Virus record (IMG/VR): IMGVR_UViG_3300036770_007495 | Location: 160,704 to 224,703 of that record | Length of the DNA: 64,000 nt | Reading direction: 5' to 3' (one strand) | Part shown: positions 738-57,668 of the stretch, one piece after another | Position numbering within the stretch: position 1 is the first letter of the stretch | How the letters are laid out: every line of letters begins with the position of its first letter | Notes under the pieces: model-generated | What the model saw: only the letters and a program-made list of their open reading frames with translations | Databases searched by the model: none | Told to the model about the DNA's origin: nothing | Program-made: the position numbers and the translations under genes

Positions 738-745
738 GCTTATAT

Positions 746-1585
746 TTAGCTAAGAGCCATCAATTCGCTAGGAATATCAAACACAGGAATTGCTTTTTTA
801 CCATATGGTGCGCCCATGTCAACAACAATGAATCCTGCTGATGACAGAGTGTATGTTGCAGAACCTGTTCCAGTGGATGCAAGATACTGAGTTGTGCCTT
901 CTTTTGAACCCAACGGAAACTGGTTGTAGAACCCTCCAAATGCACCATATGAGCTCAAAGGCAAACGTGATGCATTGTAGAGTGATGACAATGCAATGGC
1001 ATTGCTCTTGATCTGAAGAGATTGTTCATCAATTGCTGCACACAAAGTCATTGAAGCTGTTGAGCCAATGCCCTGACCCAGCAAAGTTGAAACATTGATG
1101 TTTGCATTTGTGATTGTACCAACACGCAATTGATTGCTGCTAATGATGATGGTGGAATTATCCACTCTTGCACTCAATCCTTGTGTTGTTGCTGCAATTG
1201 CACCAGACAAGAATACAAGTGAAGAACTTGCAGTATTGATGGTGAGTTGATTGGATCCATTAAATTTGATGGAAGTACCATCAACTTGTGCACCAATATA
1301 CTTCCATGCTGATGTTTGCGTTGCATCAGTACCAGTCAATTGGTACAGCAAACTGTTTTCAACAACCAAGTCACCTTGATATGCTGCAAGAGATGTCTTG
1401 TTTGCAGCAATGGGTGTAAATGATTTAGACCCCACAACCAATCCGCCCATTGTTGCACCATCACCAACAAAAACTCTTTTGGAGTCAATGGTGTAACCCA
1501 ATTCACCTTGATCAAGAGTAATCAGCAGTCTTTGTGATTCAAGACCGCGGCGCAATTTGAGTTTAATGATTTTTATGTCAGGCAT
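746..1585 (-). CDS. Virion fibre/adaptor protein with Mtd_N-like domain
   Basis: KLKLRRG...LDQGELGYTIDSKRVFVGDG motif. Start moved to the ATG at 1585, 5 nt after the upstream stop. Confidence 0.75.
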   Translation of the reverse strand: MPDIKIIKLKLRRGLESQRLLITLDQGELGYTIDSKRVFVGDGATMGGLVVGSKSFTPIAANKTSLAAYQGDLVVENSLLYQLTGTDATQTSAWKYIGAQVDGTSIKFNGSNQLTINTASSSLVFLSGAIAATTQGLSARVDNSTIIISSNQLRVGTITNANINVSTLLGQGIGSTASMTLCAAIDEQSLQIKSNAIALSSLYNASRLPLSSYGAFGGFYNQFPLGSKEGTTQYLASTGTGSATYTLSSAGFIVVDMGAPYGKKAIPVFDIPSELMALS

Positions 1586-1590
1586 ATTGT

Positions 1591-3192
1591 TTAGGGAATA
1601 TAAAATTCTTTGACGTACTTCCACACACCAATGCCGCCATCACATTCACCGCTGTGTGCAGCTCTGAAGCTTGTAGAGATAGTAGCGGATTTGATGCGAA
1701 TAAAACCAGTTGCAACTGCAGGCTGCAATCCATACTTTGTCAAATAATCAGTGATGTATGAAGTTGTAGTTCCTGTGCCAGATCTATTCTTGTAACAGAA
1801 AGCAATGTTGCGCTTGTCAATGTTGGGTGCATTGTTTGCGTCTGTTGTCTTGATGTCTACAGCAGAAGAAGTTGTTACATTTGTGACACTTGCATAGAAA
1901 TTCTTGTAATACAATTGATTGTCAAGATAAATGATGAGAGTTGTTACTCTATCAATAACTTTTGGTCTGCTGCTTGTGCCTGTTGATCTTGTGAAAGAAG
2001 AATTGTAAACATTGTCGCTGATGTCTGTTACAGAATTGTTGACAGTGAATGTGTAAAAACCGTCTCTGCACTTGTCATATGCGCGTGTAACAATTTCTAC
2101 AGCAATGAGTTTATTCTGCGCCATGTATTCAGGTGTTATTGTGTAAGTTTGAACACCAGTATTAATTGAGCAGCTGCCTTTCTCACCCTTTTCAGCAAGA
2201 TAGTAGTAATCTTTGTATCTGAAATTTGTGTAGAACATTTGAGGTTCATCAATTGCATAAAAGAGCGTATTGCCAATTGTGAGAACATTCATGTTGGTGC
2301 TGTCACCATTTTGACTGTACACACTAACTGATGATACTCCTTGTGAAAGTACAATTGCCCATCCATTGTCACCTGTTGCAGGAGTTGCAGGATTTGCTGC
2401 AGGGTTCACATGAGATCCTTTGGATACCTGAGTCATGTACATGTTGTTGTTGTACTGCTCATTGAACCAAACGGTGTATCTTCCTGCACCGCTGCGAGAT
2501 ACACTTGCAACATTGTATGCAGAACGAATAGTGGTGCTAACGCCCAGTGTGCCGGGTGCTGCAGTAACATTTTGTGGCAGCGGAAATGTAAAGTTGTTTG
2601 TATCAGTTCTTGTAACTGGGTATGAACCATTAAGTGTTGCATCAGAAGCAGTGAGGCTAATGATTTGTCCTGTAGCAAGACCATGATTAGCTTTGGTGCA
2701 CTGTACAATGCCACCGCTTGAACCTGTATCAACTGTATATGAAATTCCTGTGATGGGCTTGCCATCAAAATTTACCCAGCATTGACGAATGGGGCTAAGA
2801 AAAATTTGCTCAACAAGTCCTTTGCTGTTGACGTTGATGGTATCAATTTGAGAATATGATCCTTCAGGATTTGGATCCAAGTCAGGCAATGCTTCCAAAA
2901 CAACTTGACCAAAATCTACATGTCCATTGCCATCTGTCACAAGTGGAAACCCTTCACCAGAAACAGAATCAGTGTTAGTGTATTCCAACTCACCAGCAGA
3001 AAGTTTGCCAGAAATTGTGACGCTGCCACTCACCTGAATGCCATTGCCAGATACACCCAAAGCAAGTGCAGAAGCTTGACCACTACCATCATACATGGTT
3101 TGCAATCCCTGTGTAGGAAGTGCTGCACCTTCAGCATGCAATACACCCTCGTAGGTAGATTCAACTGTTTGATCGAGTAAACTGGTAGGCAT
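1591..3192 (-). CDS. Putative virion structural/fibre protein
   Basis: 533-aa S/T/G-rich ORF with 'CWVNFDG...AYNVASVSRSGAGRYTVWF' fibre-type motif. TAAATA 7 nt upstream. Confidence 0.6.
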   Translation of the reverse strand: MPTSLLDQTVESTYEGVLHAEGAALPTQGLQTMYDGSGQASALALGVSGNGIQVSGSVTISGKLSAGELEYTNTDSVSGEGFPLVTDGNGHVDFGQVVLEALPDLDPNPEGSYSQIDTINVNSKGLVEQIFLSPIRQCWVNFDGKPITGISYTVDTGSSGGIVQCTKANHGLATGQIISLTASDATLNGSYPVTRTDTNNFTFPLPQNVTAAPGTLGVSTTIRSAYNVASVSRSGAGRYTVWFNEQYNNNMYMTQVSKGSHVNPAANPATPATGDNGWAIVLSQGVSSVSVYSQNGDSTNMNVLTIGNTLFYAIDEPQMFYTNFRYKDYYYLAEKGEKGSCSINTGVQTYTITPEYMAQNKLIAVEIVTRAYDKCRDGFYTFTVNNSVTDISDNVYNSSFTRSTGTSSRPKVIDRVTTLIIYLDNQLYYKNFYASVTNVTTSSAVDIKTTDANNAPNIDKRNIAFCYKNRSGTGTTTSYITDYLTKYGLQPAVATGFIRIKSATISTSFRAAHSGECDGGIGVWKYVKEFYIP

Positions 3193-3215
3193 TTGCTTTT
3201 ATTTATCGCAATCGG

Positions 3216-5099
3216 TTAGTTTAACAATACTGTTTTAGAGCCTGATACAGAAGGTACAAAATTATTGATGCGTGTTTTTGTAATTTGAAGCACATCATTT
3301 TGCAAATCCCATATTTGCTTCAAAACTCTGTTGAGTGTACCTGGACTTGATGCAATTTCATTGTCATGCACATAGAAGTTGTTGGCATTGTCAATGGTAA
3401 TGCTGTTGAATTCATCATTTGTCAAAGCAACAATGCCTTGATTTACAAGATTGCCGATGTAGTCATAACTTGCTGCATATCTACCAGCAAGATAATTCTT
3501 TATGTACATTGTATTGGAGATGATTTTGTGCAATTCTTTGTTGAGAACAAATGCTTGAATCATTTCTGAATCATTAACTCTCAAGTTGTTGATTGCATAA
3601 ATGGTGAAGTCAGTTGATCCGAGCACACTTGTGTAGAGTGTTGGTTCTGTGTAATGTAAAATTCTGTTGAATGACTCACTCAAATATCCTGCAAAAACAA
3701 AAATCTCATCAGCATCCAAGTTGCTAGGCAAGAGTGACATGCTGCTTACTGCAATGCCTTTTCTCACAATGGCTCTTCCATCATTCCAGCGCCATTTTGC
3801 GCGATTGTAACGAGAAAACTCATTGTTCCAAATGTGGTCATTTGTAAATCCGCTTTTGTAAAATAGCCATTTGCCAATGCTTACATCTGGTCTGTTGACA
3901 AACTTTTTGAACACGTTTACATTGGTAAACATGTACATGATGTTGCTGTCATTGTATGAAAACTGCAATCCCTTGAAATATTCACCATCAATCAATTCAT
4001 CCTGCAAAATGTATTCTTGCTCAATGTTGAGATCCACATCACAAATTTGCAGAGTATTTGTTTTGGTTGTTAAATTGCTCACAATTACATAGACCTTGTC
4101 AAAAACATCATTGTATTGAAAAGCACGTGCAACTGTTGATGTGCCAATGGTGAATGCTCTGGTTGTTATGTATGATAGATTAGAATCATACACTTTGATG
4201 CATCTGTTGCCCTTGTCATGCACATACACACGATCAATGGAATCATTTGCATAAATTAAATCAGGGCCATTGAATTTTGTCTTGGCAAGAGCATTACCCT
4301 CACCACCAATTGATGCAACTAAAAATCTCTTGTTGGTAAGAGGTACATCATTGTTGTAAAAGCCACCAACATCATATTTGTAGACATTGTTTTGCTTAAC
4401 ATCACAAACATACATGAAATTGTTAGTGATGCTGAAGCTGCTGAGTTGCAAAAATGTTAAATCGCTGTTGGTATCAACATTTGCATTGTCATGAGTCACT
4501 TGCAATGATGTTAAATCAGGATTGCTACTCAACGCAATGATGGATGTAGGCGAAATGCCCAAGAAAGCATAGCCTACTTCATCTTGAATTTTTACAGCTT
4601 GCAGCTGAATTGCATTACCAATTGCACCAAGACCAACACCAGAAAAAGGTGTAAAAGTTGTAGCATCAGTTGGATCCTGTGCAATCCATGCTGGCAATGC
4701 ACTTAAACAACCTGCTGCACGATCAAAATTGTGTGGAATATCATTGCTTGCAATGAAGCATTTGGAATACAGATACAAAGAGTTGTTGTAGAGCTTATAC
4801 AGTCGGTCATTCAAAACTCTACCATTGAATGTCTCATTTGCTGCAATTTGTACATCAACATTGAAGTCATATGGCAGAGACAATTCATCTTTCAGAATTC
4901 TATCTCTAAAAAACTTTGAAGTCACCACATCTGCTGCATACGTATTTTTATCTGCAAGTTCTGCTGCATTATCAGCAATGTCTCTAGAAGCATAGATGTT
5001 TCCATCAACTACATGGTAGTATCCAACGTAGTCATTTCCGGTCAATGCAAAGTCTTTGCCGTTGGTGTATCCAACTTTGATGGAGGAGTAATCAATCAC
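3216..5099 (-). CDS. Virion protein with NHL-repeat-like beta-propeller
   Basis: KFNGPDLIYANDSIDRVYVHDKGNRCIKVYD resembles an NHL repeat. GTG start 5 nt after TAAATA. Confidence 0.6.
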   Translation of the reverse strand: MIDYSSIKVGYTNGKDFALTGNDYVGYYHVVDGNIYASRDIADNAAELADKNTYAADVVTSKFFRDRILKDELSLPYDFNVDVQIAANETFNGRVLNDRLYKLYNNSLYLYSKCFIASNDIPHNFDRAAGCLSALPAWIAQDPTDATTFTPFSGVGLGAIGNAIQLQAVKIQDEVGYAFLGISPTSIIALSSNPDLTSLQVTHDNANVDTNSDLTFLQLSSFSITNNFMYVCDVKQNNVYKYDVGGFYNNDVPLTNKRFLVASIGGEGNALAKTKFNGPDLIYANDSIDRVYVHDKGNRCIKVYDSNLSYITTRAFTIGTSTVARAFQYNDVFDKVYVIVSNLTTKTNTLQICDVDLNIEQEYILQDELIDGEYFKGLQFSYNDSNIMYMFTNVNVFKKFVNRPDVSIGKWLFYKSGFTNDHIWNNEFSRYNRAKWRWNDGRAIVRKGIAVSSMSLLPSNLDADEIFVFAGYLSESFNRILHYTEPTLYTSVLGSTDFTIYAINNLRVNDSEMIQAFVLNKELHKIISNTMYIKNYLAGRYAASYDYIGNLVNQGIVALTNDEFNSITIDNANNFYVHDNEIASSPGTLNRVLKQIWDLQNDVLQITKTRINNFVPSVSGSKTVLLN

Positions 5100-5107
5100 A
5101 TGAATAT

Positions 5108-8100
5108 TTACTCATAGTCAACAAATTCAACACCCAAGATGTTGATTGTTGCTGGCAGAGATTGTGAAACTTGGCTCAAGACTTGTTGTTTGAGTGATGT
5201 CTTGAGTGATTCATTTGCAATGCCAGAGTTTTTGATGATGATGGATACATTGTTGCTCTTCATGCCTGGTGCTCCAAATGCAAACATGCGCTTGATGACA
5301 TCAATGTTGTTGCGCATGCCACAAGGCAAATGGAATGTTAAGTCAGATACATTGTAATCCTGCATTGTGATGAATCTTACATCATTTTCTGAAAGAGCTT
5401 TAGCATAAATTTTCGGATACAGCAGTGTTGCATTGCTTGCAAAGTATGCTTGCGGCTGTTTCAAGAATTGAGCAAGTGTTGCACCATTGACAAATTGTGT
5501 AGTTCCAAATGCAATTGCATTTGAAATCAATGGCTGCTGCACAGCATATTTTGCTGCACCAAAATTAACTACATCTGCTGTCTTGCCATCAATGAATATG
5601 GTTGCATTGCCCTGAATGCCATCAAGTCTCAAAGCAAAATGCTTGGTTCCTGGCAAGATGTTGTCAAGATCCACAGTTGTTGTGACTGTTTTGATGTCTC
5701 TATTGTTGTATTTGTTAGCAAGCTTCACCACAAAATCAAGCTTGTTGCCGCGATTCTTGTATTTTTGCTGCAAATATTGTGAATTTGTGAGATTGAGCGT
5801 TGCATTTTCAGAGTAAAGCACATCAGTTGCAACAGATGCAATGATGTTGCCTTGTGTATCCAGCTTTGCAAGATGTATTTTGTTGTTTGCATCTTTGGAT
5901 GCAACAATGGTTGTATGAACCAATGCACTGCCAATGTATTCATAGCAGTTGGTGATTGCAAAATTGATGGTGCTCAATGCATTGAGTGTACTGACATTGT
6001 ATTGCAACACACGCTCACTATTGTATTTTACAACCTTGAAGTCGCCATTGAGGATGTAAATGTTTTGATCCTTATCAACATCAAAATCTCTGATGTAGTT
6101 GATAACTTGAGCAGAGGAAAGTGACTTGAATGCTACATATTGCTCATTGGTTGCATAGTTGTAATTGACAATTTGATTGTTGTTATACAGATACAAGGCA
6201 GCATTGGTGCCATAAGGTATTGCTTTTGTGCCTAGAGTACCTACAATGCCACGATCACCATACAAAATACTCTTGGATGCAGGTGCTACTTCAAATGTTG
6301 ACAGAGTCTCTGTAGCAAAATTGAAGCGAGATACAGTCGTCTCATCAGCATGAAGAATATACACATCATCATTGTTTTGAACAACATCAATCCAGTTGAA
6401 AGTTGATGGAGCATTTGACAAAAGGCCAATGTCGTTGAGTGTTCGTACAATTAAATCAGCATAAAAGCTTGGTGTACTTGCTGCCAACACATTGTAAGAA
6501 TAGCTGATGTTGTTAAAATCAGACAATCCATTGGCGCCTGCATATGCACCATATCCATTTTGCACAGCTTCTAAAAATTGTCTAAAGCCTGTGTAAAGAT
6601 TTGGACCAGTATTGACTTGAAATACAACTGCACTATAAGCATATGGTGAAGTTGTTAGCAAATCACGCGCAGTAACAATATCATTGTTGTAAGTTGCAGT
6701 AGAAGCATTGATGTTGAATGTTGTGGAATCAGCACCATAAGGAGATGATTCATCTTGAAACACCAAATTAACAACTCTGGTTATTGTTGATGTTGTTCTT
6801 GGTGCAGAGACAACAATCATTGTGCGTTCTGTAGCACCATATTCACTAAAGAGCCTCACATTGACACGTTCATCATACAATGCTTCATCATTATTGAAGT
6901 AAGGAAGCAGTGTTTGCTTGAGAATTGTATCACGCATTTGAATCAAAGGCTCAAGAGTTGAGTTCATGGACCCTGAATCATCAAACCAAATGTTGAGCTC
7001 TGTGTTTACATCAATGAGACCTGCATCAGCAAGATTGTATTTGTCATACAGAGTGCCATCAGCATGCATTTTGTACAATGCATAGTTGGAGATGGCACCA
7101 AAGTCATCAATGGCATCAAAGCGTGGCACAAAAAGAGTTGGTTCAGGCAACAAAGTCTGTGTGATGCGATTGAAATCACTGTTGTAAATGTTGAGAGCAG
7201 ATGTGCTCTGCAACATGATGAGTGGTGTTACAACAGGATCTTTGATGAGAGCAAATCCAGTATCAGTCAAATTGCCAAGAACTTGATAAGCATTGAGATT
7301 TTTCCAATCATCACACTTGAGCCAGAAGGAAATGGTGAATGCATAATTTGCATTAATTGCATCATAGTTCTGAACTACATCATATGAATTGCCATTGAGT
7401 TCATATGCTTTGTTTGCAATGTAGGCATCTGAATACAGTTGATTGTTGCTTGTCTTCCACTGCAAACTATCAATGATGAGTGCATTGTCATGAGTTGCAA
7501 GATGTTCATTGATGCGTTTGTTGCCAATTCTGTAGTAGAAGTATTCTTGATTGGGTTCAAAAACTACATCACTCTTCTTATCAAAGAAATCATATGCAAA
7601 TGATTGCTGTTGCAAGTATGCAGATACAAAATCCTCATATGTTCCATATGTTACATTAACAGCTTTAGCTGCATCCAATGGTGACATCTTGTTGGAATTG
7701 TAGTATCTATCCACCCATTCAGCAGATGAATTATTTGGACCAGCAGATAGCCAGGTGCAAAGATATTGACCATCTTCACCTTGTGCAGCATTCTTGAGAG
7801 CAAGGATTTGATCAGCTGTGTAAGGTGAATCACCAGCATAAGCACCATCTGTTCTCAATGAAGCATCATTTACATTGAGTTGCTCATACGGATACAGAGA
7901 TGCAGATGTTTTGAATGATGAATATGCATCAGACTTAGCAACAAAGTCATTGGAAAACATTGTGAAGTTGATGGTGATGTTTTCATCACCCTTTTCTTGA
8001 CTGTTGCCTGCAAAAATGTTGGTGTAATCTCTGTTGATGGGACCAGCATTGTTGTTTCTTTGGTTGGTGTAACTTGCTTTGTCAAGAGTACCAAGTTGAG

Positions 8101-9037
8101 TTGACTGATTCTTGAGAACAATGGGTCTTGCTGGCACTTGCAGTGGAGTTGCATCTGCATATTGAGTAGCAACAAGCAAATTGCTTGGCAAATCATTGAG
8201 CAAAGTTGCATCATTGATGTTTAGCTTGTTGACATCATCAGTTGTGTATGAAGCCCATGAAGCATTCAATTTGCTACCCACTTGCAGTTCATTGGACCTC
8301 ACCAAAAAGTTAAAATTGTTGAACAGCAAGTAGTTGCTTGCATTGTATGCACTCAGCAATTGCAATTTGTTGCTATCAAAACCAGATACACCCAAAAATT
8401 TGGTGCGATTGCCTGAGAGAGGCTTTCTTAAGAACAAAGACTCACCAGATGAATCAAAAATGTATTCAAAAATTGTTTCGTCAATGTAATTGAAGTTGAG
8501 ATCATCGTAATCTGTGTATCCAGTAGCAAAAACTACATCTTCATTGCTGTTGATGGCAAGATAAAACTTCTCATGCTTGTATTTGTAGCAAATGCGTGCA
8601 TACTTCTCATCAAGCATTTCAAAATTGAAGAATGACTGATCAGGCACAGGCATGGAATCAAGTGCAAGCAATCTATGTGAAGTTGCTGCATTGAAATCAA
8701 ATGTGAATGTCTCTCTTTGACCATCAAAATACAAATACTTGGTAGCAGCATTTTGAGTAGCATCAATTGATAGACCCAGCTGTGTGGTTATGATTGAGCC
8801 CGGTTTCTTTTGCAGAGGTCTTAACTCAAAAACATCATCAAGACTCAATTCATTGGACAGCACCAGCGCGCTGTAATTGTTCATGGCAACATCTCTTGCG
8901 CTCAACATGAAATTGTGCAAGAAAATGTTGATGCCTTGCTGATTGTTGCTTGTGTTGCCTTTGAATTTAAAATCAACATCATCATGATAAGTGCAGCTTG
9001 CACTAGTCATGTGTGTCGAATAATTGAATACCTGCAT
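5108..9037 (-). CDS. Large virion protein (1309 aa): split LamG-like domain, beta-propeller-like region and VWA-like insert
   Basis: FTISFWLK ... KHFALRLDG...IFIDGK...PKIYAKALS (LamG-like); NIWFDDSGSM (MIDAS-like). TAAATA 5 nt upstream. Confidence 0.6.
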   Translation of the reverse strand: MQVFNYSTHMTSASCTYHDDVDFKFKGNTSNNQQGINIFLHNFMLSARDVAMNNYSALVLSNELSLDDVFELRPLQKKPGSIITTQLGLSIDATQNAATKYLYFDGQRETFTFDFNAATSHRLLALDSMPVPDQSFFNFEMLDEKYARICYKYKHEKFYLAINSNEDVVFATGYTDYDDLNFNYIDETIFEYIFDSSGESLFLRKPLSGNRTKFLGVSGFDSNKLQLLSAYNASNYLLFNNFNFLVRSNELQVGSKLNASWASYTTDDVNKLNINDATLLNDLPSNLLVATQYADATPLQVPARPIVLKNQSTQLGTLDKASYTNQRNNNAGPINRDYTNIFAGNSQEKGDENITINFTMFSNDFVAKSDAYSSFKTSASLYPYEQLNVNDASLRTDGAYAGDSPYTADQILALKNAAQGEDGQYLCTWLSAGPNNSSAEWVDRYYNSNKMSPLDAAKAVNVTYGTYEDFVSAYLQQQSFAYDFFDKKSDVVFEPNQEYFYYRIGNKRINEHLATHDNALIIDSLQWKTSNNQLYSDAYIANKAYELNGNSYDVVQNYDAINANYAFTISFWLKCDDWKNLNAYQVLGNLTDTGFALIKDPVVTPLIMLQSTSALNIYNSDFNRITQTLLPEPTLFVPRFDAIDDFGAISNYALYKMHADGTLYDKYNLADAGLIDVNTELNIWFDDSGSMNSTLEPLIQMRDTILKQTLLPYFNNDEALYDERVNVRLFSEYGATERTMIVVSAPRTTSTITRVVNLVFQDESSPYGADSTTFNINASTATYNNDIVTARDLLTTSPYAYSAVVFQVNTGPNLYTGFRQFLEAVQNGYGAYAGANGLSDFNNISYSYNVLAASTPSFYADLIVRTLNDIGLLSNAPSTFNWIDVVQNNDDVYILHADETTVSRFNFATETLSTFEVAPASKSILYGDRGIVGTLGTKAIPYGTNAALYLYNNNQIVNYNYATNEQYVAFKSLSSAQVINYIRDFDVDKDQNIYILNGDFKVVKYNSERVLQYNVSTLNALSTINFAITNCYEYIGSALVHTTIVASKDANNKIHLAKLDTQGNIIASVATDVLYSENATLNLTNSQYLQQKYKNRGNKLDFVVKLANKYNNRDIKTVTTTVDLDNILPGTKHFALRLDGIQGNATIFIDGKTADVVNFGAAKYAVQQPLISNAIAFGTTQFVNGATLAQFLKQPQAYFASNATLLYPKIYAKALSENDVRFITMQDYNVSDLTFHLPCGMRNNIDVIKRMFAFGAPGMKSNNVSIIIKNSGIANESLKTSLKQQVLSQVSQSLPATINILGVEFVDYE

Positions 9038-9058
9038 ATGAGTATTTAACTCATTGCA

Positions 9059-10015
9059 TTAGTATTTGATGCAAGGAAGTAATGCAATGTTGCGTGGTCT
9101 GGTTTCTATACCCTGCAACTGAACATTGCTATTTTCAACTCTTGCTAGAGTATTTGATGGCGGGCTATTTACAAAAGAATCTGTAAATGCATTTGGAGAA
9201 GACTTAACAAATCCTGCTGCAAGAGCAGACTCAGATGTAAGATATCTAGCAGAAAATTCTGAACCTACATCTACTACGCGTGTCAGGAGATTGTGCTCAC
9301 CAACTTGATGAGATTGATTGCTGCCAAAGGTTCTGCCTACATCAACATCAGCACGCTGATCACCGCCTGCTCGACTCCAGCCGCGAATAAATTCACCACG
9401 CAAATCTGGTAGTTCACCGCCACTGCCATATGTAGCACCAAGAATAGCGTAAAGATTAGAGAAATCAGCAGCAATTCCTTGTGCTATACCATTGCCATTC
9501 GGCACTTGACCACCACTGCAGATGAGATATCCAGTTGGCGCAGTTTGACCAGCAAACCAAAATACTGCGCCTGTTGGAACAGCAAATGCACCAGCACCAA
9601 CTGCTGCATCAACATATTGCTTGGTAACTGCATCCAGCAATTGAGTAGGATTTCCTGTGAGCGTCAAGTGTCCAGTCATGGTACCACCCGACAAAGCCAA
9701 AAATCCGGATTTTACATTGGCTAGAACTTGCGCGTCTTGTGTATCAACGTAGCCTTTGTTTGCTGCATCAAGAGTTTTAAATGGGCTGCCAGTAAGAGCC
9801 AAATAACCAGTCATTGCATCACCTGTTTTGCTCACTTTGTTGGTATAGATATCAGGTAGAATGATGCTGCTGATGGATTTGTAAAGTGTTGCAAAGCTTA
9901 CTTTTTTGGTGTATCCATCACCACCAATTTGATCAACAACAAAAACATCGCCATTGTAAAGCAATGAAGCTGGTGGGAGTTGAGAAATGTTGACTTGTTG
10001 TGCTTGCTGGGCCAT
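9059..10015 (-). CDS. Tail fibre protein with phage tail collar domain
   Basis: VPTGAVFWFAGQTAPTGYLICSG...LYAILGATYG...LPDLRGEFIRGW, plus DAANKGYVD/DAVTKQYVD repeats. Confidence 0.85.
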   Translation of the reverse strand: MAQQAQQVNISQLPPASLLYNGDVFVVDQIGGDGYTKKVSFATLYKSISSIILPDIYTNKVSKTGDAMTGYLALTGSPFKTLDAANKGYVDTQDAQVLANVKSGFLALSGGTMTGHLTLTGNPTQLLDAVTKQYVDAAVGAGAFAVPTGAVFWFAGQTAPTGYLICSGGQVPNGNGIAQGIAADFSNLYAILGATYGSGGELPDLRGEFIRGWSRAGGDQRADVDVGRTFGSNQSHQVGEHNLLTRVVDVGSEFSARYLTSESALAAGFVKSSPNAFTDSFVNSPPSNTLARVENSNVQLQGIETRPRNIALLPCIKY

Positions 10016-10030
10016 ATGTGTATTTATGCG

Positions 10031-13650: not shown

Positions 13651-13693
13651 CACAGTTATTTAAACGCATGGCGCAGAAATGTAAATCATTTTA

Positions 13694-14152: not shown

Positions 14153-14160
14153 AATGCTAT

Positions 14161-17904: not shown

Positions 17905-17909
17905 AGCAT

Positions 17910-17930
17910 TATTTAGGGCTGCAATAAATA
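17910..17930. promoter_or_regulatory. Back-to-back late promoters (TAAATA - 17910-17915; + 17925-17930)
   Basis: Drive the 17904(-) gene and the terminase (17939,+). Confidence 0.7.
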
Positions 17931-17938
17931 AAAGCACT

Positions 17939-36678: not shown

Positions 36679-36684
36679 ATAGCA

Positions 36685-41125: not shown

Positions 41126-41133
41126 ATATCATC

Positions 41134-47115: not shown

Positions 47116-47152
47116 TTGAGTTATTTATGAACTATACAATGTAGTTCAAATA

Positions 47153-49003: not shown

Positions 49004-49034
49004 TGTCGGTTATTTATGGTTGTATGCTTTTGTT

Positions 49035-51974
49035 TCAACCAGCTGCAAACAAATTTGTGCGCAGGCATTTGAATACCTTGTCTGTAGCATTGCCCTGTAG
49101 AGAATGTGCTGTGAGTGAAACTGCCAATCCATTGGTAATGGTGCCATATTCTACCAACGGACCAGTGCTAGTAAACAAAATACCATATTCAGAAGATGCT
49201 GCTTCTGCACCATCACCAATTGTATTGATCTCACTGTAGTGCACTTTGTTGAGCACTGTGTCTCTCACTTCAATGATGTACTTGCATGAGTTGAAATCAG
49301 TTAGACTGTATGAATCAATGATGCCAAAATCAGCAATGGATGTCTTCTCAAAATTTGAAATGGGCTTTGGATTGATTTCAAGATAGTGAGACGCATTGCT
49401 GCCATCACCAGTTGCAAGCATGTAAATTCTGCCATTGGCTGTAAGATTGATGGTGCCGCTCTTTTTAACAATGCCATTGTACCATTCAGTGTTGATGAAA
49501 TTGGTCAGTGAAGTCTGTGCACTATCACGATTGATGTACAAAGTATCAACCAATTGATTGGTATTGCCGCCAGAGAAATAAATTGCACTGCTGGAACTCA
49601 CTGTGCCTGCAACAGTCAAATTGCCGCTGATGGCAACACTGCCAGTCACATCAAATCCAGACAATTCATACTGCTTGATGTCAATGTATGTGATGTTGGC
49701 AGATGTTGCTTCAAGCAAAGATGTTGTAAGCGTGCCCTGCACCGTAACATTGCCTGTTACAGTGCCGCCAGACAGAGGCAGATAATTGCCAGATGCATTG
49801 TTGTTAGCATTGATCCAAATGGCTGATGCAGAATTATAAACAAGTGTCTGTCCATCTTGTACATCGGTGATGCGAACATTGTGCAGCTCATCCAATTCAT
49901 AGCCATTGTCTATTTCAACATAAATTTTTCCATTGACTGTTGAATTGAGAGAAAATCCGACCTTGACAAGGTGATTTGGTGCCTGTGGTTTGATGTTTGT
50001 TATTGCACCCGCAGCAGTTGAGGAGAGATAAAGTGTGGTGCCTTCAGGATATGCTCTTGTATCAATGCCTTCAAGCTCACCCATGGTCATGATGTAGCCT
50101 TCTTGGTTGATTGCAGTTGATCCCATGGTTATACCAATGGTATCTGCTGATCTAAGATCAGAAGTAGCAAGTGCAGGCCACATTTTGCCTCTGTTGCCTT
50201 GCACACCTGATAGATAAACTACTGTGCCTTTGGGAATTTCACTGCCTGTTTTGTTGACACCAATGATCCACAACATTTTATTGATGGGATACTTGAGTAC
50301 AGGATCTCCATCCATGAATACCAAAGTACGCTCAGCACTATCATAGTATAAGCGCCCATCAACATGAACAGGTGCAACATCTCTGAGGGTGAATGTCAGC
50401 ATCTCAGCATTGAAAGCACTCATGGTGCTTACATTGACAGTGTTGCCAAATGGTGTTATACCCAAATCGCCAGATGATGTATTAAATGTAAGAGTTTGAT
50501 ACCCTCCTCCACCGCTAGAAAAAATGTCTGCTAGATCCACACCACCAGACAGAATCTGACCTGTTGCAACATTGAGCGTGCCGTTCATTGTGCCACCATC
50601 TGCATACTGAACAGCAACAGTGCCGCCTCCTGCATATGACTGAGCATAAATGGCAAACTTCTTATACAAGTCAGTCTGCAAATTGGCAACATGAGACTTG
50701 ACCTCATTTGACATTTCTGTCTTGATGGCTCCCAATGCATCTTTGAAAACATTGGCTTGAGATGCTCGAGCTTCAGAAATGATGCCTTCATCAGGAGCAT
50801 TGTCTTTGAGAGCATGAACTTGCTCTGCAAACACTTCTTCCACACATTCGCGAACTGATTTGATTTGCTTGGTTGCTATTTTGTCAGCAGCTTCTTCAAG
50901 CGTCTGTTGAGCATGATCTTTGAGCTGTTGTTTTAAGTCATCAACAGATTCTTTGATTTGATCAATTTGCTGTTTTGAAACATCTTGCAGCCATGTGGTT
51001 TGCTTGGCAAAAAATGCAGCAATGCCATCATCAAAATTTTTGACGTTTTCAGTTACAACATTCTCATTGAATTCTTTGAGCTGCTGTTCAACATGCAACT
51101 TGAGATTTTCATCTGCATCCTTGATGACTGCTTGCAGAGACTCTGACAGTTGCGTAATTTTGCTGGTGAGCTCACCCTGCAGTGCATTCTTTGCTTCAAC
51201 ATTTGCAGCAAATATTTTTTCAGACAAATGTGTGAAAGTGCTGTGCTCTTGTTCCTGCACAACAGTCTCAAATTGGTCTTCCAGACGCTTGCATGCTTTT
51301 CTGAGCACATCAATGGTATGCTTGTTGATTTTGATTTCTGCAGTCTGTTTCCACTGCTCAAACAAATCAGCAAACTTCTCTGCACCATCATTGATCTTCT
51401 GATTGATGATGTTTTCCGCTTTGTTTTGAATGCCAAGTGCAGAAGCTGCAATGCTTTGACGAGCATCATCAATGGATTCATCAATGCGTTCCAGCAATTG
51501 CTGCTCAACTTGCTGCAAAAACTCAACAATTTTGTTTTCTTTGTTGGCTTTGGATTCTTCCTGCAATGCAGTCCAATTGTGCTGATTTTCTAAATCAACA
51601 TCTTCAACAATTTCTTCTTGTTCAATGAGATCATCAACTTCTGCTGCCTGTTCGTGAAGCAGTGCTTCAGATTCAAATTCTATGGCAATGCCATGCAGCA
51701 GTGCGTGTTCATTGATGAACACTTGAGATGGTGCATTGGATTCTACAACAACCTTGAACTCAATGTCTTTGTAAATTTTGCTGCCATATTCTACATCAAC
51801 TTTGATGATGGGGCAACCATCTACGTATCTCTCTGCTGATTTGATGAAAGCTGCATTTTCATTGAGCGTAATGTTGAATACGTTGAAAAATGCTTCATCA
51901 ACCTGGCTGCATCGAATAATGTTCTCACCTGTTTTAGTGAGATTGAAATTGAATTGTTGGTTGTCCAGGCGCAT
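49035..51974 (-). CDS. Chimeric virion protein: long acidic coiled coil plus fibre-type C-terminal domains
   Basis: E/Q/K-rich heptads over about aa 110-480, then GGGTVAVQY, GYELDELHNVRIT, YLPLSGGTVTGNV and IIDSYSLTDFNSCKYIIEV motifs. Confidence 0.65.
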   Translation of the reverse strand: MRLDNQQFNFNLTKTGENIIRCSQVDEAFFNVFNITLNENAAFIKSAERYVDGCPIIKVDVEYGSKIYKDIEFKVVVESNAPSQVFINEHALLHGIAIEFESEALLHEQAAEVDDLIEQEEIVEDVDLENQHNWTALQEESKANKENKIVEFLQQVEQQLLERIDESIDDARQSIAASALGIQNKAENIINQKINDGAEKFADLFEQWKQTAEIKINKHTIDVLRKACKRLEDQFETVVQEQEHSTFTHLSEKIFAANVEAKNALQGELTSKITQLSESLQAVIKDADENLKLHVEQQLKEFNENVVTENVKNFDDGIAAFFAKQTTWLQDVSKQQIDQIKESVDDLKQQLKDHAQQTLEEAADKIATKQIKSVRECVEEVFAEQVHALKDNAPDEGIISEARASQANVFKDALGAIKTEMSNEVKSHVANLQTDLYKKFAIYAQSYAGGGTVAVQYADGGTMNGTLNVATGQILSGGVDLADIFSSGGGGYQTLTFNTSSGDLGITPFGNTVNVSTMSAFNAEMLTFTLRDVAPVHVDGRLYYDSAERTLVFMDGDPVLKYPINKMLWIIGVNKTGSEIPKGTVVYLSGVQGNRGKMWPALATSDLRSADTIGITMGSTAINQEGYIMTMGELEGIDTRAYPEGTTLYLSSTAAGAITNIKPQAPNHLVKVGFSLNSTVNGKIYVEIDNGYELDELHNVRITDVQDGQTLVYNSASAIWINANNNASGNYLPLSGGTVTGNVTVQGTLTTSLLEATSANITYIDIKQYELSGFDVTGSVAISGNLTVAGTVSSSSAIYFSGGNTNQLVDTLYINRDSAQTSLTNFINTEWYNGIVKKSGTINLTANGRIYMLATGDGSNASHYLEINPKPISNFEKTSIADFGIIDSYSLTDFNSCKYIIEVRDTVLNKVHYSEINTIGDGAEAASSEYGILFTSTGPLVEYGTITNGLAVSLTAHSLQGNATDKVFKCLRTNLFAAG

Positions 51975-52008
51975 ATCTCGTTGCCCGGATATTTATGCAT
52001 CATTTTCA

Positions 52009-54855: not shown

Positions 54856-54946
54856 ATTTGTGAATGATTTTATTTACTACAATTAACAACGAAGTCAATG
54901 AACCAATGAACAATGCAAAGTAGAATAGAGCCTTGGAAATACTCAT
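54818..54946 (-). CDS. 42-aa single-transmembrane peptide
   Basis: MSISKALFYFALFIGSLTSLLIVVNKIIHKYDLITWSDGIRW; TAAATA-N5-ATG. It overlaps the next gene by 38 nt. Confidence 0.5.
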   Translation of the reverse strand: MSISKALFYFALFIGSLTSLLIVVNKIIHKYDLITWSDGIRW

Positions 54947-54950
54947 GAGG

Positions 54951-57617
54951 TTATTTATTTGTTGATGCAACAACTCTTTCGTACAAGCCAAAGAAACCAT
55001 GCTTTGGCTTTGGTTTGTAGTGATCAAACAATGCTTGTTGCTGATGTTGTTGTAGCTCAGCAAAAGAAGATGTATTGCGAAGCGTATTTCCATCCAGATA
55101 ATACATCAATCCAGATCCATTGATGGCCACCGGAGTGCCATTCAAATCACCTTTGATCAAGGTTCTCCCACCCAATTTGAATCCTTTGTTGCGCATTTCT
55201 GCTTGTGCATTGGCAATATCACGCTCACCAAAATTTATAAACAACAATTGCGGCTTAAATCCTGCATTGATGAGCATTGCAATGTTTGGCAACATTTGCT
55301 GAAAATCAGCTGAATCGTAACCATTGCCTCTCAGAGAAATCATTTTTTGAATGTTGTCCATGGATGCAGGCACCATGAGTGATCTACCAAATGAATTTCG
55401 CAATAAATCATTGTTGCCAAATGCAAGTTCAGGACGATTGGCAATCAATTCATTGTTGGATTGTGCCTTGAGATCAGCAAAAAATCCGCGGCGCTTGTCA
55501 GCAATGACATACTTTTGACTCAGTTTGATTTTGGCAATTTTGGGATACATTCTGCCAAAATCAGATGATGGATCAATGATGGCCATGAGCTGTGCAAAGT
55601 GTGGTGCAACTTTGTTGATGAATTTTTTGTTGCGATTTACATATGCAGAAATTTCATCATTGTTCATGATGGCATTGGCAGCTCTAGTGACTACACTTGA
55701 TGGCTTGCGGGTGATGCTGTTGTCAATTGCAGTGACTATTTTTTTGATGCTTGTTTCTCGTGGCAAGTTTAATTTTGCAGCAATATCAAACAACCCTGTG
55801 ATGGTATTTGCATTTACTTCACCGCGCACATCTGCTGTGAGTCTGTTGGTGATGCTTTGTGCATACAAGTCAAATAGTTTTTGCTTGTTTTCGGGTGTTG
55901 AATTTTCAATGTATGTAGCAAAGCTGTCTAGTACTTGTGGTGAGCTAGCAATGATTCCTTTTGGATCTTTCCAGTTGAATGCACCACCCATGCTCATGTA
56001 ATAGCTGAATGAATCATTGATTGCTTCTACTGCAGCTTTGTACTCATCAAATCGTCTATCAGACTTGTTGATGGTACCCATCAAAGCTTTGACGCCAATT
56101 GCAACTCCCTGAAGCACATCAACGTTGATTGTTGCATCAAAATACAAGCGCTCTTCTTCCACAAGCTTTGCTATTTGAGAAGCAATTTTTTTGCCAAGTT
56201 CAGGTCTGTATGCATAAACCACAGGCAAAGATTCACTAATGAATTTGATGAGCTTATTGAAGCCTTGTGCATCATTATCAAGCAAATCCGTATCTTGTGG
56301 GAATGATTGCTTGAATGAATCAATCAAAGATGGAATGTATTGTGCAGCATATTTTTCATAGCTAAAATCAGTACCCACAAGACTTGATTCATGCATGCTC
56401 ACTAGTGATTTGAACAATGGCGCAAAAGATGCAATTTTTTTGCCTGGATAGTAGTTGCGCAATGACATCAAACCAATGCCAACTTGTGCCTGATAATCTG
56501 CTTCGTTGATCATTTTGTTGGTTTTGATGCCACACAACTTTGTAGCAAATGTAATGTTTGATGGAACCTGCACATCAGTTAACTTTGAAACTGATTCAAG
56601 ATCTGGCATTCTCACCAAAAATCTGACATAATCATCATACCGATAATGACCTGTTGGCCACTTAACACCATAATTATAAAATGCAGAACTGCCACTGGCA
56701 ATGCGGTCAAATGATACTTTAAACGCATTGGCAATGATGGGTTCATCATTGCTATGATTCAAAAAGAAATCCAAAATAGCTTCATAAGAAGCTGGTGACA
56801 TGGTGTATACAGAGTTGGAGTGATTGAATCTATTCTTAATTTCTGCTGCACTGTAACCATGTGAAGGTTTGGGTACAATGGCATAGTCCATGAACCCATA
56901 CACATCAACTGCAACCCAGCATGGATAGTAGTTGGGCATGAGAGGCAAGCACCAATAACCACTGCATCTTTCTGATCTACCGCTGGTAAAAAAGTCAGGA
57001 TCCTTTTTTGGATCTCTGTTGCCCATCAAAATTTTTGCTGCATCTGCTGAATCAACTCTAAAAAATTTATACATTGAGTTGGCATACACCTCATCAACAT
57101 TGTTTTCTTGAAAAGCAGCAAGAGTTTTTTGCAAATTTGGGTGAGTAGCTTGTTCAAAGTCATATCTGCGGGTGATGTATGCATCCATTGCAGCAATGAG
57201 ACCAGGCAGTGGTTCTCCTTGTCTGTCCTTGACATTTTCATCAGGATAAAAGACTTTGAAGCTCATCAAGTCTTTGCTAACTTCAGGATTGTTGCGTGCA
57301 GTCTGTACGCGATATACATTCAATGCTTCACGTGCTGCTGGCGCCTGATCTGGCGTAACATTGCCAGAATACAAATTGGCCATGATGAAATCCAAATAGC
57401 GGGAATCACCATTGAGTGCACCTGTTTGCGCATTTGTTGTTACATTGTATGTTGGATCAAATGATTTAGCAATGTTGTCAATGAAAGTTTCCTTGGGTAA
57501 TGTTGCTGCACCACCAAAAATGCCATGAGTATAATTATTATACAATTCTAAAAATTTCGGATCTTTGAGAATTTTGTTTCTTTTGGATGCGTAATCTTCT
57601 AATAACAAGTGAACCAT
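54951..57617 (-). CDS. Large late protein (888 aa), candidate internal virion protein
   Basis: TAAATA-N5-ATG; N-terminus MVHLLLE; no family recognised. Confidence 0.65.
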   Translation of the reverse strand: MVHLLLEDYASKRNKILKDPKFLELYNNYTHGIFGGAATLPKETFIDNIAKSFDPTYNVTTNAQTGALNGDSRYLDFIMANLYSGNVTPDQAPAAREALNVYRVQTARNNPEVSKDLMSFKVFYPDENVKDRQGEPLPGLIAAMDAYITRRYDFEQATHPNLQKTLAAFQENNVDEVYANSMYKFFRVDSADAAKILMGNRDPKKDPDFFTSGRSERCSGYWCLPLMPNYYPCWVAVDVYGFMDYAIVPKPSHGYSAAEIKNRFNHSNSVYTMSPASYEAILDFFLNHSNDEPIIANAFKVSFDRIASGSSAFYNYGVKWPTGHYRYDDYVRFLVRMPDLESVSKLTDVQVPSNITFATKLCGIKTNKMINEADYQAQVGIGLMSLRNYYPGKKIASFAPLFKSLVSMHESSLVGTDFSYEKYAAQYIPSLIDSFKQSFPQDTDLLDNDAQGFNKLIKFISESLPVVYAYRPELGKKIASQIAKLVEEERLYFDATINVDVLQGVAIGVKALMGTINKSDRRFDEYKAAVEAINDSFSYYMSMGGAFNWKDPKGIIASSPQVLDSFATYIENSTPENKQKLFDLYAQSITNRLTADVRGEVNANTITGLFDIAAKLNLPRETSIKKIVTAIDNSITRKPSSVVTRAANAIMNNDEISAYVNRNKKFINKVAPHFAQLMAIIDPSSDFGRMYPKIAKIKLSQKYVIADKRRGFFADLKAQSNNELIANRPELAFGNNDLLRNSFGRSLMVPASMDNIQKMISLRGNGYDSADFQQMLPNIAMLINAGFKPQLLFINFGERDIANAQAEMRNKGFKLGGRTLIKGDLNGTPVAINGSGLMYYLDGNTLRNTSSFAELQQHQQQALFDHYKPKPKHGFFGLYERVVASTNK

Positions 57618-57668
57618 GCATGTATTTATGCATGGTTCTTGAGAGATCCTGCGGATTAAGCAGCAAAA

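What the first reader, a model, noticed from the sequence alone, without database searches (positions are those of the whole stretch)
743..57628. Near-invariant TAAATA-N5/6-start codon architecture with no Shine-Dalgarno: apparent leaderless late transcripts, often with the upstream stop codon inside the promoter
Seen: spacer from TAAATA to start codon is 5 nt at genes starting 737, 5099, 9037, 10015, 14152, 17904, 20263, 22973, 23933, 24842, 25402, 29618, 41134, 54946 and 57617; 6 nt at 13650, 27696, 34511, 36647, 36685 and 47115; 7-8 nt at 3192, 49003 and 17939. No AGGAGG-like sites precede them. The TAA of TAAATA is the upstream stop at 746, 5108, 14161, 23922 and 41123. Known: T4 late promoters (TATAAATA) are a bare -10 element with the start site a few nt downstream. 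Inference: the AUG sits at about +1, so most late mRNAs are leaderless and nearly every gene has its own promoter.
Basis: partly seen in the sequence, partly recalled or inferred. Interest (0 to 1): 0.62.

Follow-up and report, generated by a model that had tools for sequence, protein, structure and literature searches.

The report
Late promoters fused to start codons
In this uncultured 225-kb freshwater relative of phage T4, the late-promoter box TAAATA (and the ordinary TATAAT-type early box) sits 5-7 bases before the start codon with no ribosome-binding site, so many of its mRNAs probably begin at the AUG itself, unlike in T4.

Summary
All 24 listed sites check out. In the window, 24 of 44 TAAATA copies have an ATG 5-7 nt downstream, against 2.4 +/- 1.7 in shuffles. 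In the whole 224,703-bp genome the figure is 67 of 132, against 7.3 +/- 2.7.

The genome is a complete, terminally repeated metagenomic T4-superfamily myovirus. It encodes a gp55-type late sigma factor. The motif precedes virion genes: sheath, tube, baseplate, portal, protease, terminase, fibres.

T4's TATAAATA occupies -13 to -6, so TAAATA-N5 puts the A of ATG at +1. The base before the ATG is a pyrimidine in 34 of 39 N5 sites. Start codons there are ATG or GTG, never TTG. No Shine-Dalgarno signal exists anywhere in the genome.

New here: early and replication genes carry canonical TTGAnn-N16-18-TATAAT promoters, also 5-6 nt from ATG. The leaderless layout is therefore genome-wide, not only late. 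T4 and cyanophage S-T4 controls have 14-38-nt leaders, T4's with clear SD sites. Close relatives conserve the box and its spacing.

Two limits. Only about 24 of roughly 62 window genes have their own promoter; the rest sit in overlapping operons. No 5'-end data exist, so "leaderless" remains a strong inference. gp33 and gp45 were not detected. The host is unknown.

The parts
20252..20265 (+). Late promoter box TAAATA (20252-20257), N5, then the ATG of the tail sheath gene (20263-22905)
   Evidence: TAAATA, the N5 spacing and C at -1 are kept in five relatives while the spacer sequence varies.
22923..22951 (+). Intrinsic terminator after the sheath gene: a hairpin followed by a T-run
   Evidence: -23 kcal/mol, z = -6.35. 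Only 21 nt remain before the next ATG, and TAAATA is the only promoter-like element in them.
22962..22975 (+). TAAATA-N5-ATG of a 164-aa ORF (22973-23467)
   Evidence: This ORF is missing in a strain variant, where a TAAATA-N7 box is joined directly to the next gene's ATG at 23484.
23922..23935 (+). TAAATA-N5-ATG of a lysozyme-domain / baseplate-hub-like protein. The TAA of the box is the stop codon of the gp4-like head-closure gene.
   Evidence: conserved in L009 and L030.
24831..24844 (+). TAAATA-N5-ATG of the tail tube gene (24842-25390)
   Evidence: phrog_45. The box and N5 spacing are conserved in five close relatives; distant relatives have N10.
25391..25404 (+). TAAATA-N5-GTG of a 235-aa ORF
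   Evidence: The GTG and the spacing are conserved in L009, L011, L012 and L015.
27684..27698 (+). TAAATA-N6-ATG of a 629-aa tape-measure-like protein
29607..29620 (+). TAAATA-N5-ATG of the 363-aa first gene of a four-gene overlapping operon (29618-34039)
36645..36687 (.). Back-to-back divergent late promoters in a 37-nt intergenic region: CAT-N6-TATTTA ... TAAATA-N6-ATG. They serve a 187-aa ORF on the minus strand and the gp25-like baseplate wedge gene on the plus strand.
17902..17941 (.). Back-to-back divergent late promoters in a 34-nt intergenic region: a 268-aa ORF on the minus strand (N5) and the gp17-like large terminase on the plus strand (N8)
41123..41136 (+). TAAATA-N5-ATG of a 136-aa ORF. 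The TAA of the box is the stop codon of the 715-aa PKD-domain protein.
735..748 (-). TAAATA-N5-ATG of an 858-aa gene that runs off the window start. The TAA of the box is the stop codon of the upstream gene.
3190..3205 (-). TAAATA-N7-ATG of a 533-aa gene
5097..5110 (-). TAAATA-N5-GTG of a 627-aa gene. The TAA of the box is the stop codon of the 1309-aa gene.
9035..9048 (-). TAAATA-N5-ATG of a 1309-aa gene
10013..10026 (-). TAAATA-N5-ATG of a 318-aa tail-collar-domain (fibre) protein
13648..13662 (-). TAAATA-N6-ATG of a 990-aa gene
   Evidence: conserved in L009-L011 and L015.
14150..14163 (-). TAAATA-N5-ATG of a 152-aa gene. The TAA of the box is the stop codon of the 317-aa gene.
34509..34523 (-). 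TAAATA-N6-ATG of a 159-aa gene, divergent from the dUTPase promoter
34534..34570 (+). Sigma70-type promoter TTGAAA-N16-TACATT-N6-ATG of the dUTPase gene (34568-35062). It shows the same abutting layout in a non-late gene.
47113..47127 (-). TAAATA-N6-ATG of a 635-aa gene
49001..49016 (-). TAAATA-N7-ATG of a 616-aa gene
54944..54957 (-). TAAATA-N5-ATG opening only a 42-aa ORF. Doubtful as a gene.
57615..57628 (-). TAAATA-N5-ATG of an 888-aa gene
26944..26961 (+). TAAATA-N9-ATG of a 239-aa gene. Would give a leader of about 3-4 nt.
51972..51995 (-). TAAATA-N15-ATG of a 979-aa gene. Would give a leader of about 10 nt without SD.

Best explanation
The window is the virion-gene region of a complete 224.7-kb T4-superfamily myovirus assembled from a subsurface or freshwater metagenome. 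TAAATA, in extended form (C/A)ATAAATA, is the -10-type element of its late promoters. It is read by host RNA polymerase carrying the phage's gp55-like sigma factor.

In T4 this element lies at -13 to -6. Here it is placed so that the sixth base downstream, a purine preceded by a pyrimidine, is the A or G of the start codon (N5), or lies 1-2 nt upstream of it (N6, N7). The late mRNAs are therefore leaderless or nearly so. They would be translated by direct binding of the ribosome and initiator tRNA to a 5'-terminal AUG or GUG, without Shine-Dalgarno pairing.

Each such promoter drives one gene or a short operon. Downstream cistrons would be reached by termination-reinitiation at overlapping stop/start codons, or through A-rich, G-poor junctions. 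A few of those junctions carry a short AAGGA.

The same layout holds for early and replication genes, which use canonical sigma70 promoters (TTGAnn-N16-18-TATAAT) 5-6 nt from ATG. Leaderless expression is therefore the phage's general strategy, presumably matched to a host that translates such mRNAs well.

Shown: motif, spacing, statistics, the gp55 gene, gene classes, conservation, absence of SD, and the contrast with T4. Inferred: the exact transcription start, the translation mechanism and the host.
For: 1. Spacing is far beyond chance.

2. The phage encodes a gp55 homologue: T4 gp55 E=5e-9 with 39% identity, phrog_234 E=1e-25, and 45% identity to HTVC008M gp55. It lies in T4-like synteny with gp47 and gp46.

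3. Motif-bearing genes are virion genes: sheath, tube, gp25/gp6-like baseplate proteins, portal, protease, gp3-like protein, terminase, tail-collar fibre. By contrast dUTPase, RNA ligase, DNA polymerase and QueC carry sigma70-type boxes.

4. Geometry fits. TA of T4's TATAAATA is at -13/-12, so TAAATA spans -11 to -6 and N5 makes the A of ATG +1. TATAAT-like boxes have a modal spacing of N6 (9 of 12) and TAAATA N5 (30-39 sites). That is the 1-nt offset expected from -12..-7 against -11..-6.

5. The start-site rule holds. The -1 base is C or T in 34 of 39 N5 sites and never A. The sixth base is a purine in 10 of 15 N6 sites and 6 of 7 N7 sites.

6. Start codons at the boxes are ATG (about 57) or GTG (3), never TTG. 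This matches the codon rule for leaderless initiation in mycobacteria.

7. There is no SD enrichment. AAGGA occurs before 5 of 105 internal genes against 0.8 expected, and before 0 of 84 promoter-adjacent genes.

8. The anatomy leaves no room for leaders. A strong terminator ends 21 nt before ATG 22973. Divergent gene pairs share intergenic regions of 28-37 nt holding only two back-to-back boxes.

9. The box and its spacing are conserved while the spacer sequence drifts, in IMG/VR relatives with 75-79% sheath identity.

10. Controls differ. T4 has 14-28 nt with GGAG or AGGA. S-T4 has 9-38 nt with no N5-7 peak.
Against: - No 5'-end mapping exists. The two metatranscriptome runs are held only as contigs, and some of those contigs run across promoters and the terminator. 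That could be read-through or DNA carry-over.
- gp33 and the gp45 clamp, needed for activated late transcription in T4, were not detected by any search, and the gp55 C-terminus shows no SLDFLY-like clamp-binding motif. The gp44 clamp loader is nevertheless present.
- The start distance set by this diverged gp55 is assumed from T4, not measured.
- Several TAAATA genes sit directly behind an upstream gene, so read-through transcripts with the box inside them must also exist.
- The major capsid gene has no box of its own.
- Three Verrucomicrobiota genomes, the only host lead, show no enrichment of the -35/-10/N6/ATG pattern.
Confidence: 0.72

Rival explanations
1. TAAATA is the late promoter, but the diverged gp55 holoenzyme starts transcription at another distance. 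One option is a start a few nt inside the ORF, so that the real start codons lie downstream. Another is that functional mRNAs come mainly from upstream promoters and carry leaders. In that case the tight spacing would reflect genome compaction, with the stop codon inside the promoter, rather than leaderless translation.
For: - Stop codons of upstream genes lie inside or next to the box at five window sites.
- RNA-library contigs cross promoter regions.
- Distant relatives keep the box at N9-10, and three window boxes sit at N9-15, so strict abutment is not obligatory.
Against: - The spacing peaks sharply at N5 (38 sites), with N6 at 12 and N7 at 7. Compaction alone would not fix it to 1 nt.
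- Pyrimidine at -1 and purine at +1 coincide with the start codon.
- The same abutment occurs in divergent intergenic regions and directly after a terminator, where no upstream transcript can enter.
- Protein N-termini align from residue 1 in relatives.
- N6 sites have the TAA of the box in frame, so the ORF cannot start earlier.
Confidence: 0.13
2. TAAATA is a non-Shine-Dalgarno translation signal, an A/U-rich ribosome or S1 binding site at -11 to -6 inside polycistronic mRNAs. It would not be a promoter.
For: - The host evidently does not rely on SD.
- A-rich upstream regions are general in this genome.
- SD-scarce bacteria with A-rich initiation regions exist, for example Bacteroidota and some Verrucomicrobia.
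Against: - The motif equals the T4 late-promoter core, and a gp55 gene is present.
- It is restricted to virion genes and absent from the 105 operon-internal genes examined.
- Other genes have, at the same place, TATAAT boxes with a TTGAnn element 16-18 nt upstream. An upstream element of that kind has no role in translation.
- The boxes occur back-to-back in divergent intergenic regions.
Confidence: 0.06
3. The box marks an RNA-processing site. Long late transcripts would be cut just upstream of each AUG by a phage or host endoribonuclease that recognises the A/U-rich sequence, producing leaderless mRNAs after transcription.
For: It would give the same fixed distance to AUG, and it would tolerate boxes that overlap upstream stop codons.
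Against: - No nuclease of this kind was seen.
- It does not explain the match to the gp55 recognition sequence, the divergent pairs, the box after a terminator, or the parallel sigma70-type class with its -35 elements.
Confidence: 0.04

Closest known systems
Bacteriophage T4 late promoters (TATAAATA read by gp55, activated by gp33 and the gp45 clamp)
   Same: - Same core sequence, with no -35 element.
- A gp55 homologue is encoded, in the same gp55-gp47-gp46 gene order.
- The motif precedes virion genes.
   Different: - T4 has 14-28 nt between the box and ATG, with clear SD sites. Here there are 5-7 nt and no SD.
- The two upstream positions are (C/A)A rather than TA.
- gp33 and gp45 were not detected.
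Thermus phage phiYS40 middle/late transcription (Sevostyanova et al. 2007). Details are recalled from memory; the paper could not be opened and is only cited in PMC12340547.
   Same: A large myovirus whose later transcripts start at the start codon from -10-type promoters without a -35 element, in a host rich in leaderless genes.
   Different: - phiYS40 is not a T4-type phage and has no gp55-type sigma factor.
- Its host phylum (Deinococcus-Thermus) is known to be leaderless-rich. Here the host is unknown, and the early sigma70-type class is leaderless as well.
Cellular leaderless genes with a -10 box next to the ORF (Deinococcus-Thermus TANNNT motif, PMC12340547; mycobacteria, PMC4633059)
   Same: - A -10 element a few bp upstream of the start codon, with a spacing requirement.
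- No SD.
- Only ATG or GTG used as the 5'-terminal codon.
   Different: Here the -10 element of one class is recognised by a phage sigma factor. The layout is used for temporal classes across a 225-kb viral genome.
Pelagibacter phage HTVC008M and uncultured aquatic T4-like phages (IMG/VR)
   Same: - HTVC008M has a few TAAATA-N5-ATG sites among SD-led ones.
- IMG/VR relatives with 41-79% sheath identity show peaks at N5-10.
   Different: - In HTVC008M the pattern is a minority.
- In the 41-45% identity group the spacing is often N8-10.
- Only the 75-79% identity clade shares the sharp N5 mode.
Poxvirus late promoters (TAAATG, with the ATG as start codon). Analogy recalled from memory.
   Same: A late promoter initiator element overlapping or abutting the start codon.
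   Different: An unrelated polymerase and mechanism, in a eukaryotic virus. No homology is implied.

Membership tests
T4-type late transcription system | Promoter is a bare 8-bp TATAAATA-like -10 element with no conserved -35 | tested here: met
   TAAATA is invariant. The upstream two positions are mostly (C/A)A, with T at -13 in only 3 of 39 sites. No conservation is seen further upstream in 39 aligned N5 sites. Such variants are known in the family: Aeh1 has a/gC at -13/-12.
T4-type late transcription system | Phage encodes a gp55 late sigma factor | tested here: met
   Genome 128824-129306: T4 gp55 E=5e-9, phrog_234 E=1e-25, and a three-sequence HMM gives E=1e-21.
T4-type late transcription system | Co-activator gp33 | tested here: inconclusive
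   phrog_254 gave only a spurious E=0.03 hit inside a 342-aa ORF. phmmer with T4 gp33 found nothing. gp33 is small and fast-evolving.
T4-type late transcription system | gp45 sliding clamp as activator, with a clamp-binding motif at the gp55 C-terminus | tested here: inconclusive
   No hit with T4 or HTVC008M gp45, phrog_223, PF02916, PF09116 or a three-sequence HMM. The gp55 C-terminus has no SLDFLY-like motif. The gp44 clamp loader is present at window 35159-36091.
T4-type late transcription system | Motif lies upstream of late (virion) genes | tested here: met
   Sheath, tube, baseplate, portal, protease, terminase and fibre genes.
T4-type late transcription system | Late mRNAs carry a leader with a Shine-Dalgarno site, as in T4 | tested here: not met
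   T4 control: 14-28 nt with GGAG or AGGA. Here: N5-7 and no SD.
Leaderless mRNA genes | -10 element 5-7 nt upstream of the start codon, and no SD | tested here: met
Leaderless mRNA genes | 5'-terminal codon restricted to AUG or GUG | tested here: met
   About 57 ATG, 3 GTG and 0 TTG at TAAATA-N5-7 sites with long ORFs. The rule is taken from PMC4633059.
Leaderless mRNA genes | Transcription start mapped on the start codon | not testable with these tools
   Only assembled contigs of two metatranscriptomes were available. Contigs cannot show 5' ends.
Non-SD ribosome-binding motif (Bacteroidota-type) | Motif present before most genes regardless of operon position or temporal class | tested here: not met
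   The motif precedes 50-61 of about 290 genes, none of the 105 internal genes, and virion genes only.

The most novel reading that the evidence does not exclude
A whole clade of abundant, uncultured aquatic T4-like phages has abandoned leader-dependent translation. Both host-sigma early promoters and gp55 late promoters are fused to start codons. Late transcription may run without the gp33/gp45 clamp coupling that defines T4. The host is not from a phylum known for leaderless genes, so the phage would either exploit or itself induce a ribosome state that favours 5'-terminal AUGs. It also carries its own tmRNA.
Probability: 0.15. Interest if true: 0.8.

Novelty: new variant of a known kind. 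Interest (0 to 1): 0.55.

Why it matters
T4 late transcription is a textbook system, and its mRNAs are leadered and SD-dependent. A relative that keeps the gp55 promoter but fuses it to the start codon, and does the same with its sigma70 early promoters, shows that an entire lytic programme of about 290 genes can run on leaderless or coupled translation.

Three practical consequences follow:
- It gives a sequence rule (box, then N5-7, then ATG or GTG) that fixes gene starts and temporal classes in this clade of metagenomic phages, where standard gene callers that expect an RBS will misplace starts.
- It narrows the host search to bacteria that translate leaderless mRNAs efficiently.
- It offers a compact natural promoter-plus-start module for testing how gp55 holoenzyme chooses its start site.

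The phage occurs in freshwater, estuary, lagoon and subsurface data sets from 11 studies, so the strategy is ecologically common rather than a curiosity.

Tried and rejected
- **Nucleotide search.** A megablast of 12 kb against the phage collection found no match. Protein-level relatives are at most 35-39% identical.

- **Transcript ends.** No starts or ends could be read, and some contigs span promoters and the terminator. It is therefore neither support nor refutation.

- **gp45, gp33.** These were not detected by seven searches. A 225-aa candidate next to the helicase gene turned out to be glycosyltransferase-like.

- **Phage-encoded translation factors.** No ribosomal protein S21 or IF3 was found.

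- **Host.**
  - No WhiB-like protein was seen by eye among small Cys-rich ORFs.
  - The phage's UDP-galactopyranose mutase is closest to Verrucomicrobiales and Opitutales MAGs (44-52% identity, against 39% or less elsewhere). Those loci are bacterial, with 49-60% GC in all but one.
  - Some Verrucomicrobia are reported as SD-scarce.
  - Three such genomes, however, show no excess of TTGAC-N18-TANNNT-N6-ATG.
  - A BLAST of the phage tmRNA against 301 Verrucomicrobiota genomes matched only the universal 3' end.
  - The host stays open.

- **Chance or AT-richness.** Rejected by shuffles.

- **Depletion of TAAATA elsewhere.** A max-order Markov expectation for TAAATA (100, against 132 observed) gave no clear case for depletion of non-promoter copies, so that claim is not made.

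- **Literature.** Searches of the held library found no description of leaderless gp55-type late transcripts. AR9 and phiKZ have long leaders. The phiYS40 paper could not be opened.

Full report
**What the window is.** The 64-kb window is the last part (160,704-224,703) of a single 224,703-bp contig with 41% GC. IMG/VR classes it as a virus record with direct terminal repeats and 100% estimated completeness. It has no close nucleotide match in the phage collection.

Its proteins place it in the T4 superfamily:
- tail sheath, with best matches of 35-39% identity to cyanophage S-T4, Pelagibacter phage HTVC008M and T4-like coliphages;
- gp19-like tube, gp4-like head closure, gp25- and gp6-like baseplate proteins, gp17-like terminase, and a tail-collar fibre protein;
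- outside the window: portal, gp21 protease, gp23 capsid protein and a gp3-like protein, plus T4-type DNA polymerase, UvsX, gp41 helicase, gp46/47 and the gp44 clamp loader.

Near-identical DNA occurs in freshwater, lake, estuary, lagoon, soil and subsurface metagenomes from 11 studies.

**The observation.** The five cases in which the TAA of the box is the upstream stop codon are also correct. Small corrections:
- 5099 and 25402 are GTG starts;
- the ORF at 54946 has only 42 codons;
- 23933 and 36647 have alternative in-frame ATGs slightly closer to the box.

The pattern is not a product of AT-rich DNA:
- 24 of 44 window copies have an ATG at N5-7, against 2.4 +/- 1.7 (largest 7) in 200 dinucleotide-preserving shuffles;
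- genome-wide the figure is 67 of 132, against 7.3 +/- 2.7 (largest 14);
- the distance to the next ATG that opens an ORF of at least 60 codons is N5 38 times, N6 12 times and N7 7 times, and at most 3 at any other distance;
- when gene starts were called without reference to the motif, TAAATA sat at N5-7 before 49 genes, 192 times the expectation;
- SD-like words upstream of 282 genes are at background level, and G is depleted to 10-13%.

A 160-aa ORF at genome 128,824-129,306 matches T4 gp55 (E=5e-9, 39% identity over the sigma region-2-like core). It also matches the PHROG family "late sigma transcription factor" (E=1e-25) and HTVC008M gp55 (45% identity). It lies directly upstream of gp47 and gp46 homologues, as in T4.

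Genes behind the box are virion genes. Nucleotide-metabolism and replication genes (dUTPase, an RNA ligase, DNA polymerase, QueC-like) instead carry sigma70-type boxes.

The anatomy excludes other promoters in several places:
- The sheath gene is a self-contained unit. The box is at 20252, the ATG at 20263 and the stop at 22905. A -23 kcal/mol hairpin with a T-run follows at 22923-22951 (z = -6.35), and the next box at 22962 is followed by the ATG at 22973.
- Divergent gene pairs at window 17902-17941 and 36645-36687, and at genome 74,045-74,072, are separated by only 28-37 nt. Those gaps contain two back-to-back boxes and nothing else.

**Where would transcription start?** The review of T4 late transcription places the TA of TATAAATA at -13/-12. 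TAAATA therefore spans -11 to -6, and the sixth base downstream is +1. With N5 this is the A of ATG.

Three independent features of the sequence agree:
- In the 39 N5 sites the base before the ATG is C (20) or T (14), rarely G (5) and never A. This is the usual pyrimidine(-1)/purine(+1) start preference. In N6 and N7 sites the sixth base is a purine in 10 of 15 and 6 of 7 sites. This suggests a fixed start and leaders of 1-2 nt.
- The genome holds a second, unmistakable promoter class, TTGAnn-N16-18-TAnnnT. It has the same property: 17 sites at N5 and 17 at N6 from an ATG, and at most 3 at any other distance. Consensus-like TATAAT boxes peak at N6 (9 of 12) and the -1 base is a pyrimidine in 30 of 39. 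A sigma70 hexamer at -12 to -7 with N6 also puts +1 on the A. The 1-nt difference between the two classes is what their known positions predict.
- Start codons at the boxes are ATG or GTG, never TTG. This matches the requirement found experimentally for leaderless initiation in mycobacteria.

**Comparison with relatives.**
- In T4 itself, twelve TATAAATA boxes in the virion-gene region lie 14-28 nt from the ATG, with GGAG or AGGA in between.
- Cyanophage S-T4 shows 9-38 nt and no N5-7 peak.
- HTVC008M is mixed, with a few N5 sites beside SD-led genes.
- IMG/VR contigs whose sheath is 75-79% identical share the sharp N5 mode (N5 29, N6 8, N7 4). At orthologous genes they keep TAAATA, the spacing, and even a GTG start, while spacer and flanks change.
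- A more distant aquatic group (41-45% identity) has a broad N5-10 distribution, often with a conserved TAAATAATTA and N9-10. That would give leaders of 3-5 nt.
- One strain variant seen in run X19 lacks the 164-aa ORF at 22973-23467. It has in its place 17 nt containing TATAAATA joined to the ATG of the next gene at N7. The box-plus-start-codon unit is thus re-created when gene content changes.

**How the rest of the genes are expressed.** The claim that nearly every gene has its own promoter does not hold.
- About 24 of roughly 62 window genes carry the box, and 50-61 of about 290 genome-wide.
- About 34-39 genes carry the sigma70-type arrangement.
- At least 72 genes start within 5 nt of, or overlap, the preceding stop codon; 28 of these are ATGA overlaps.
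- Upstream of such internal genes the sequence is 40-50% A and about 10-15% G.
- A short AAGGA occurs before 5 of 105 internal genes (0.8 expected) and before none of 84 promoter-adjacent genes.
- The major capsid gene is one of the AAGGA cases and has no box of its own.

The likely picture is a leaderless first cistron, with reinitiation or A-rich unstructured junctions for the following ones.

**Limits.**
- No transcript 5' ends could be examined. The two RNA runs are available only as contigs, which cannot show starts and may include DNA.
- gp33 and a gp45-type clamp were not found by any sequence or profile search. The gp55 C-terminus lacks an obvious clamp-binding motif, although the clamp loader is present. 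Whether late transcription here is clamp-activated is open.
- The host is unknown. The one lead is a UDP-galactopyranose mutase closest to Verrucomicrobiota, a phylum with some SD-scarce members. The lead is weak and was not backed by a pattern test in three such genomes.

**Novelty.** T4-type late promoters and leaderless genes with a -10 box abutting the ORF are both known. phiYS40 is a phage precedent for leaderless later transcripts; this is cited, the details are from memory, and the paper could not be opened. Searches of the held literature found no report of gp55-type promoters fused to start codons, or of a T4-like phage that is leaderless in all temporal classes. The jumbo phages with mapped starts, AR9 and phiKZ, have long leaders. 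I therefore rate this a new variant of a known kind: well supported by sequence and comparison, but awaiting 5'-end mapping.

Noticed in passing
Genome 58613-59056 (+), outside the window (L043:18614-19057): A phage-encoded tmRNA: Rfam RF00023, 98.3 bits, E=5e-37. One frame holds a long tag-like ORF ending in ...EMALAA. ARAGORN's own tag call looks wrong.
   Followed up: partly
Mostly genome 12-50 kb, also 88-152 kb; in the window at 15904, 34568, 57914 and 61795: Canonical sigma70 promoters (GTTGAC-N16/17-TATAAT, also TACATT and TATATT boxes) sit 5-6 nt from the ATG of early and replication genes. The leaderless layout is therefore genome-wide.
   Followed up: yes
Window 17658-17663 (-), ATG at 17652: An in-frame internal TAAATA-N5-ATG lies inside the 268-aa ORF 17098-17904. 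It could give a 184-aa N-terminally shortened product.
   Followed up: no
Window 22952-23483: A strain variant in run X19 lacks the 164-aa ORF. It has TGTATAAATACCTTTGC in its place, directly before ATG 23484.
   Followed up: partly
Window 17045-17074: A perfect 13-bp-stem bidirectional terminator lies between convergent genes.
   Followed up: no
Window 35159-36091, and the whole genome: The gp44 clamp loader is present, but no gp45-type clamp or gp33 is detectable. The gp55 C-terminus is acidic and has no SLDFLY-like motif.
   Followed up: partly
Genome 83912-85387 (L004:12913-14388): The major capsid gene has no TAAATA box. It lies 70 nt after the scaffold gene and is preceded by AAGGAAAATCT. 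AAGGA is enriched only before operon-internal genes.
   Followed up: partly
Genome 107-117.5 kb and 152-156 kb: Two operons of sugar-nucleotide and glycan enzymes: C-methyltransferase, epimerases/dehydratases, glycosyltransferase families 2, 10 and 17, GT1, and UDP-galactopyranose mutase. Nearly all their genes overlap.
   Followed up: partly
Genome 137777-140286: A QueC-like protein and a glutamine amidotransferase-like protein lie next to the replication genes. This hints at 7-deazaguanine DNA modification.
   Followed up: no
Genome 62-72 kb, plus 27676: 24 tRNA genes, most of them in one cluster. Rfam also finds a tRNA-like match at L043:2894-2997.
   Followed up: no
Loci L014, L016, L019, L020, L022, L024: Distant aquatic relatives (41-45% sheath identity) keep a conserved TAAATAATTA box 9-10 nt before orthologous start codons. 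Their leaders would be 3-5 nt without SD.
   Followed up: partly
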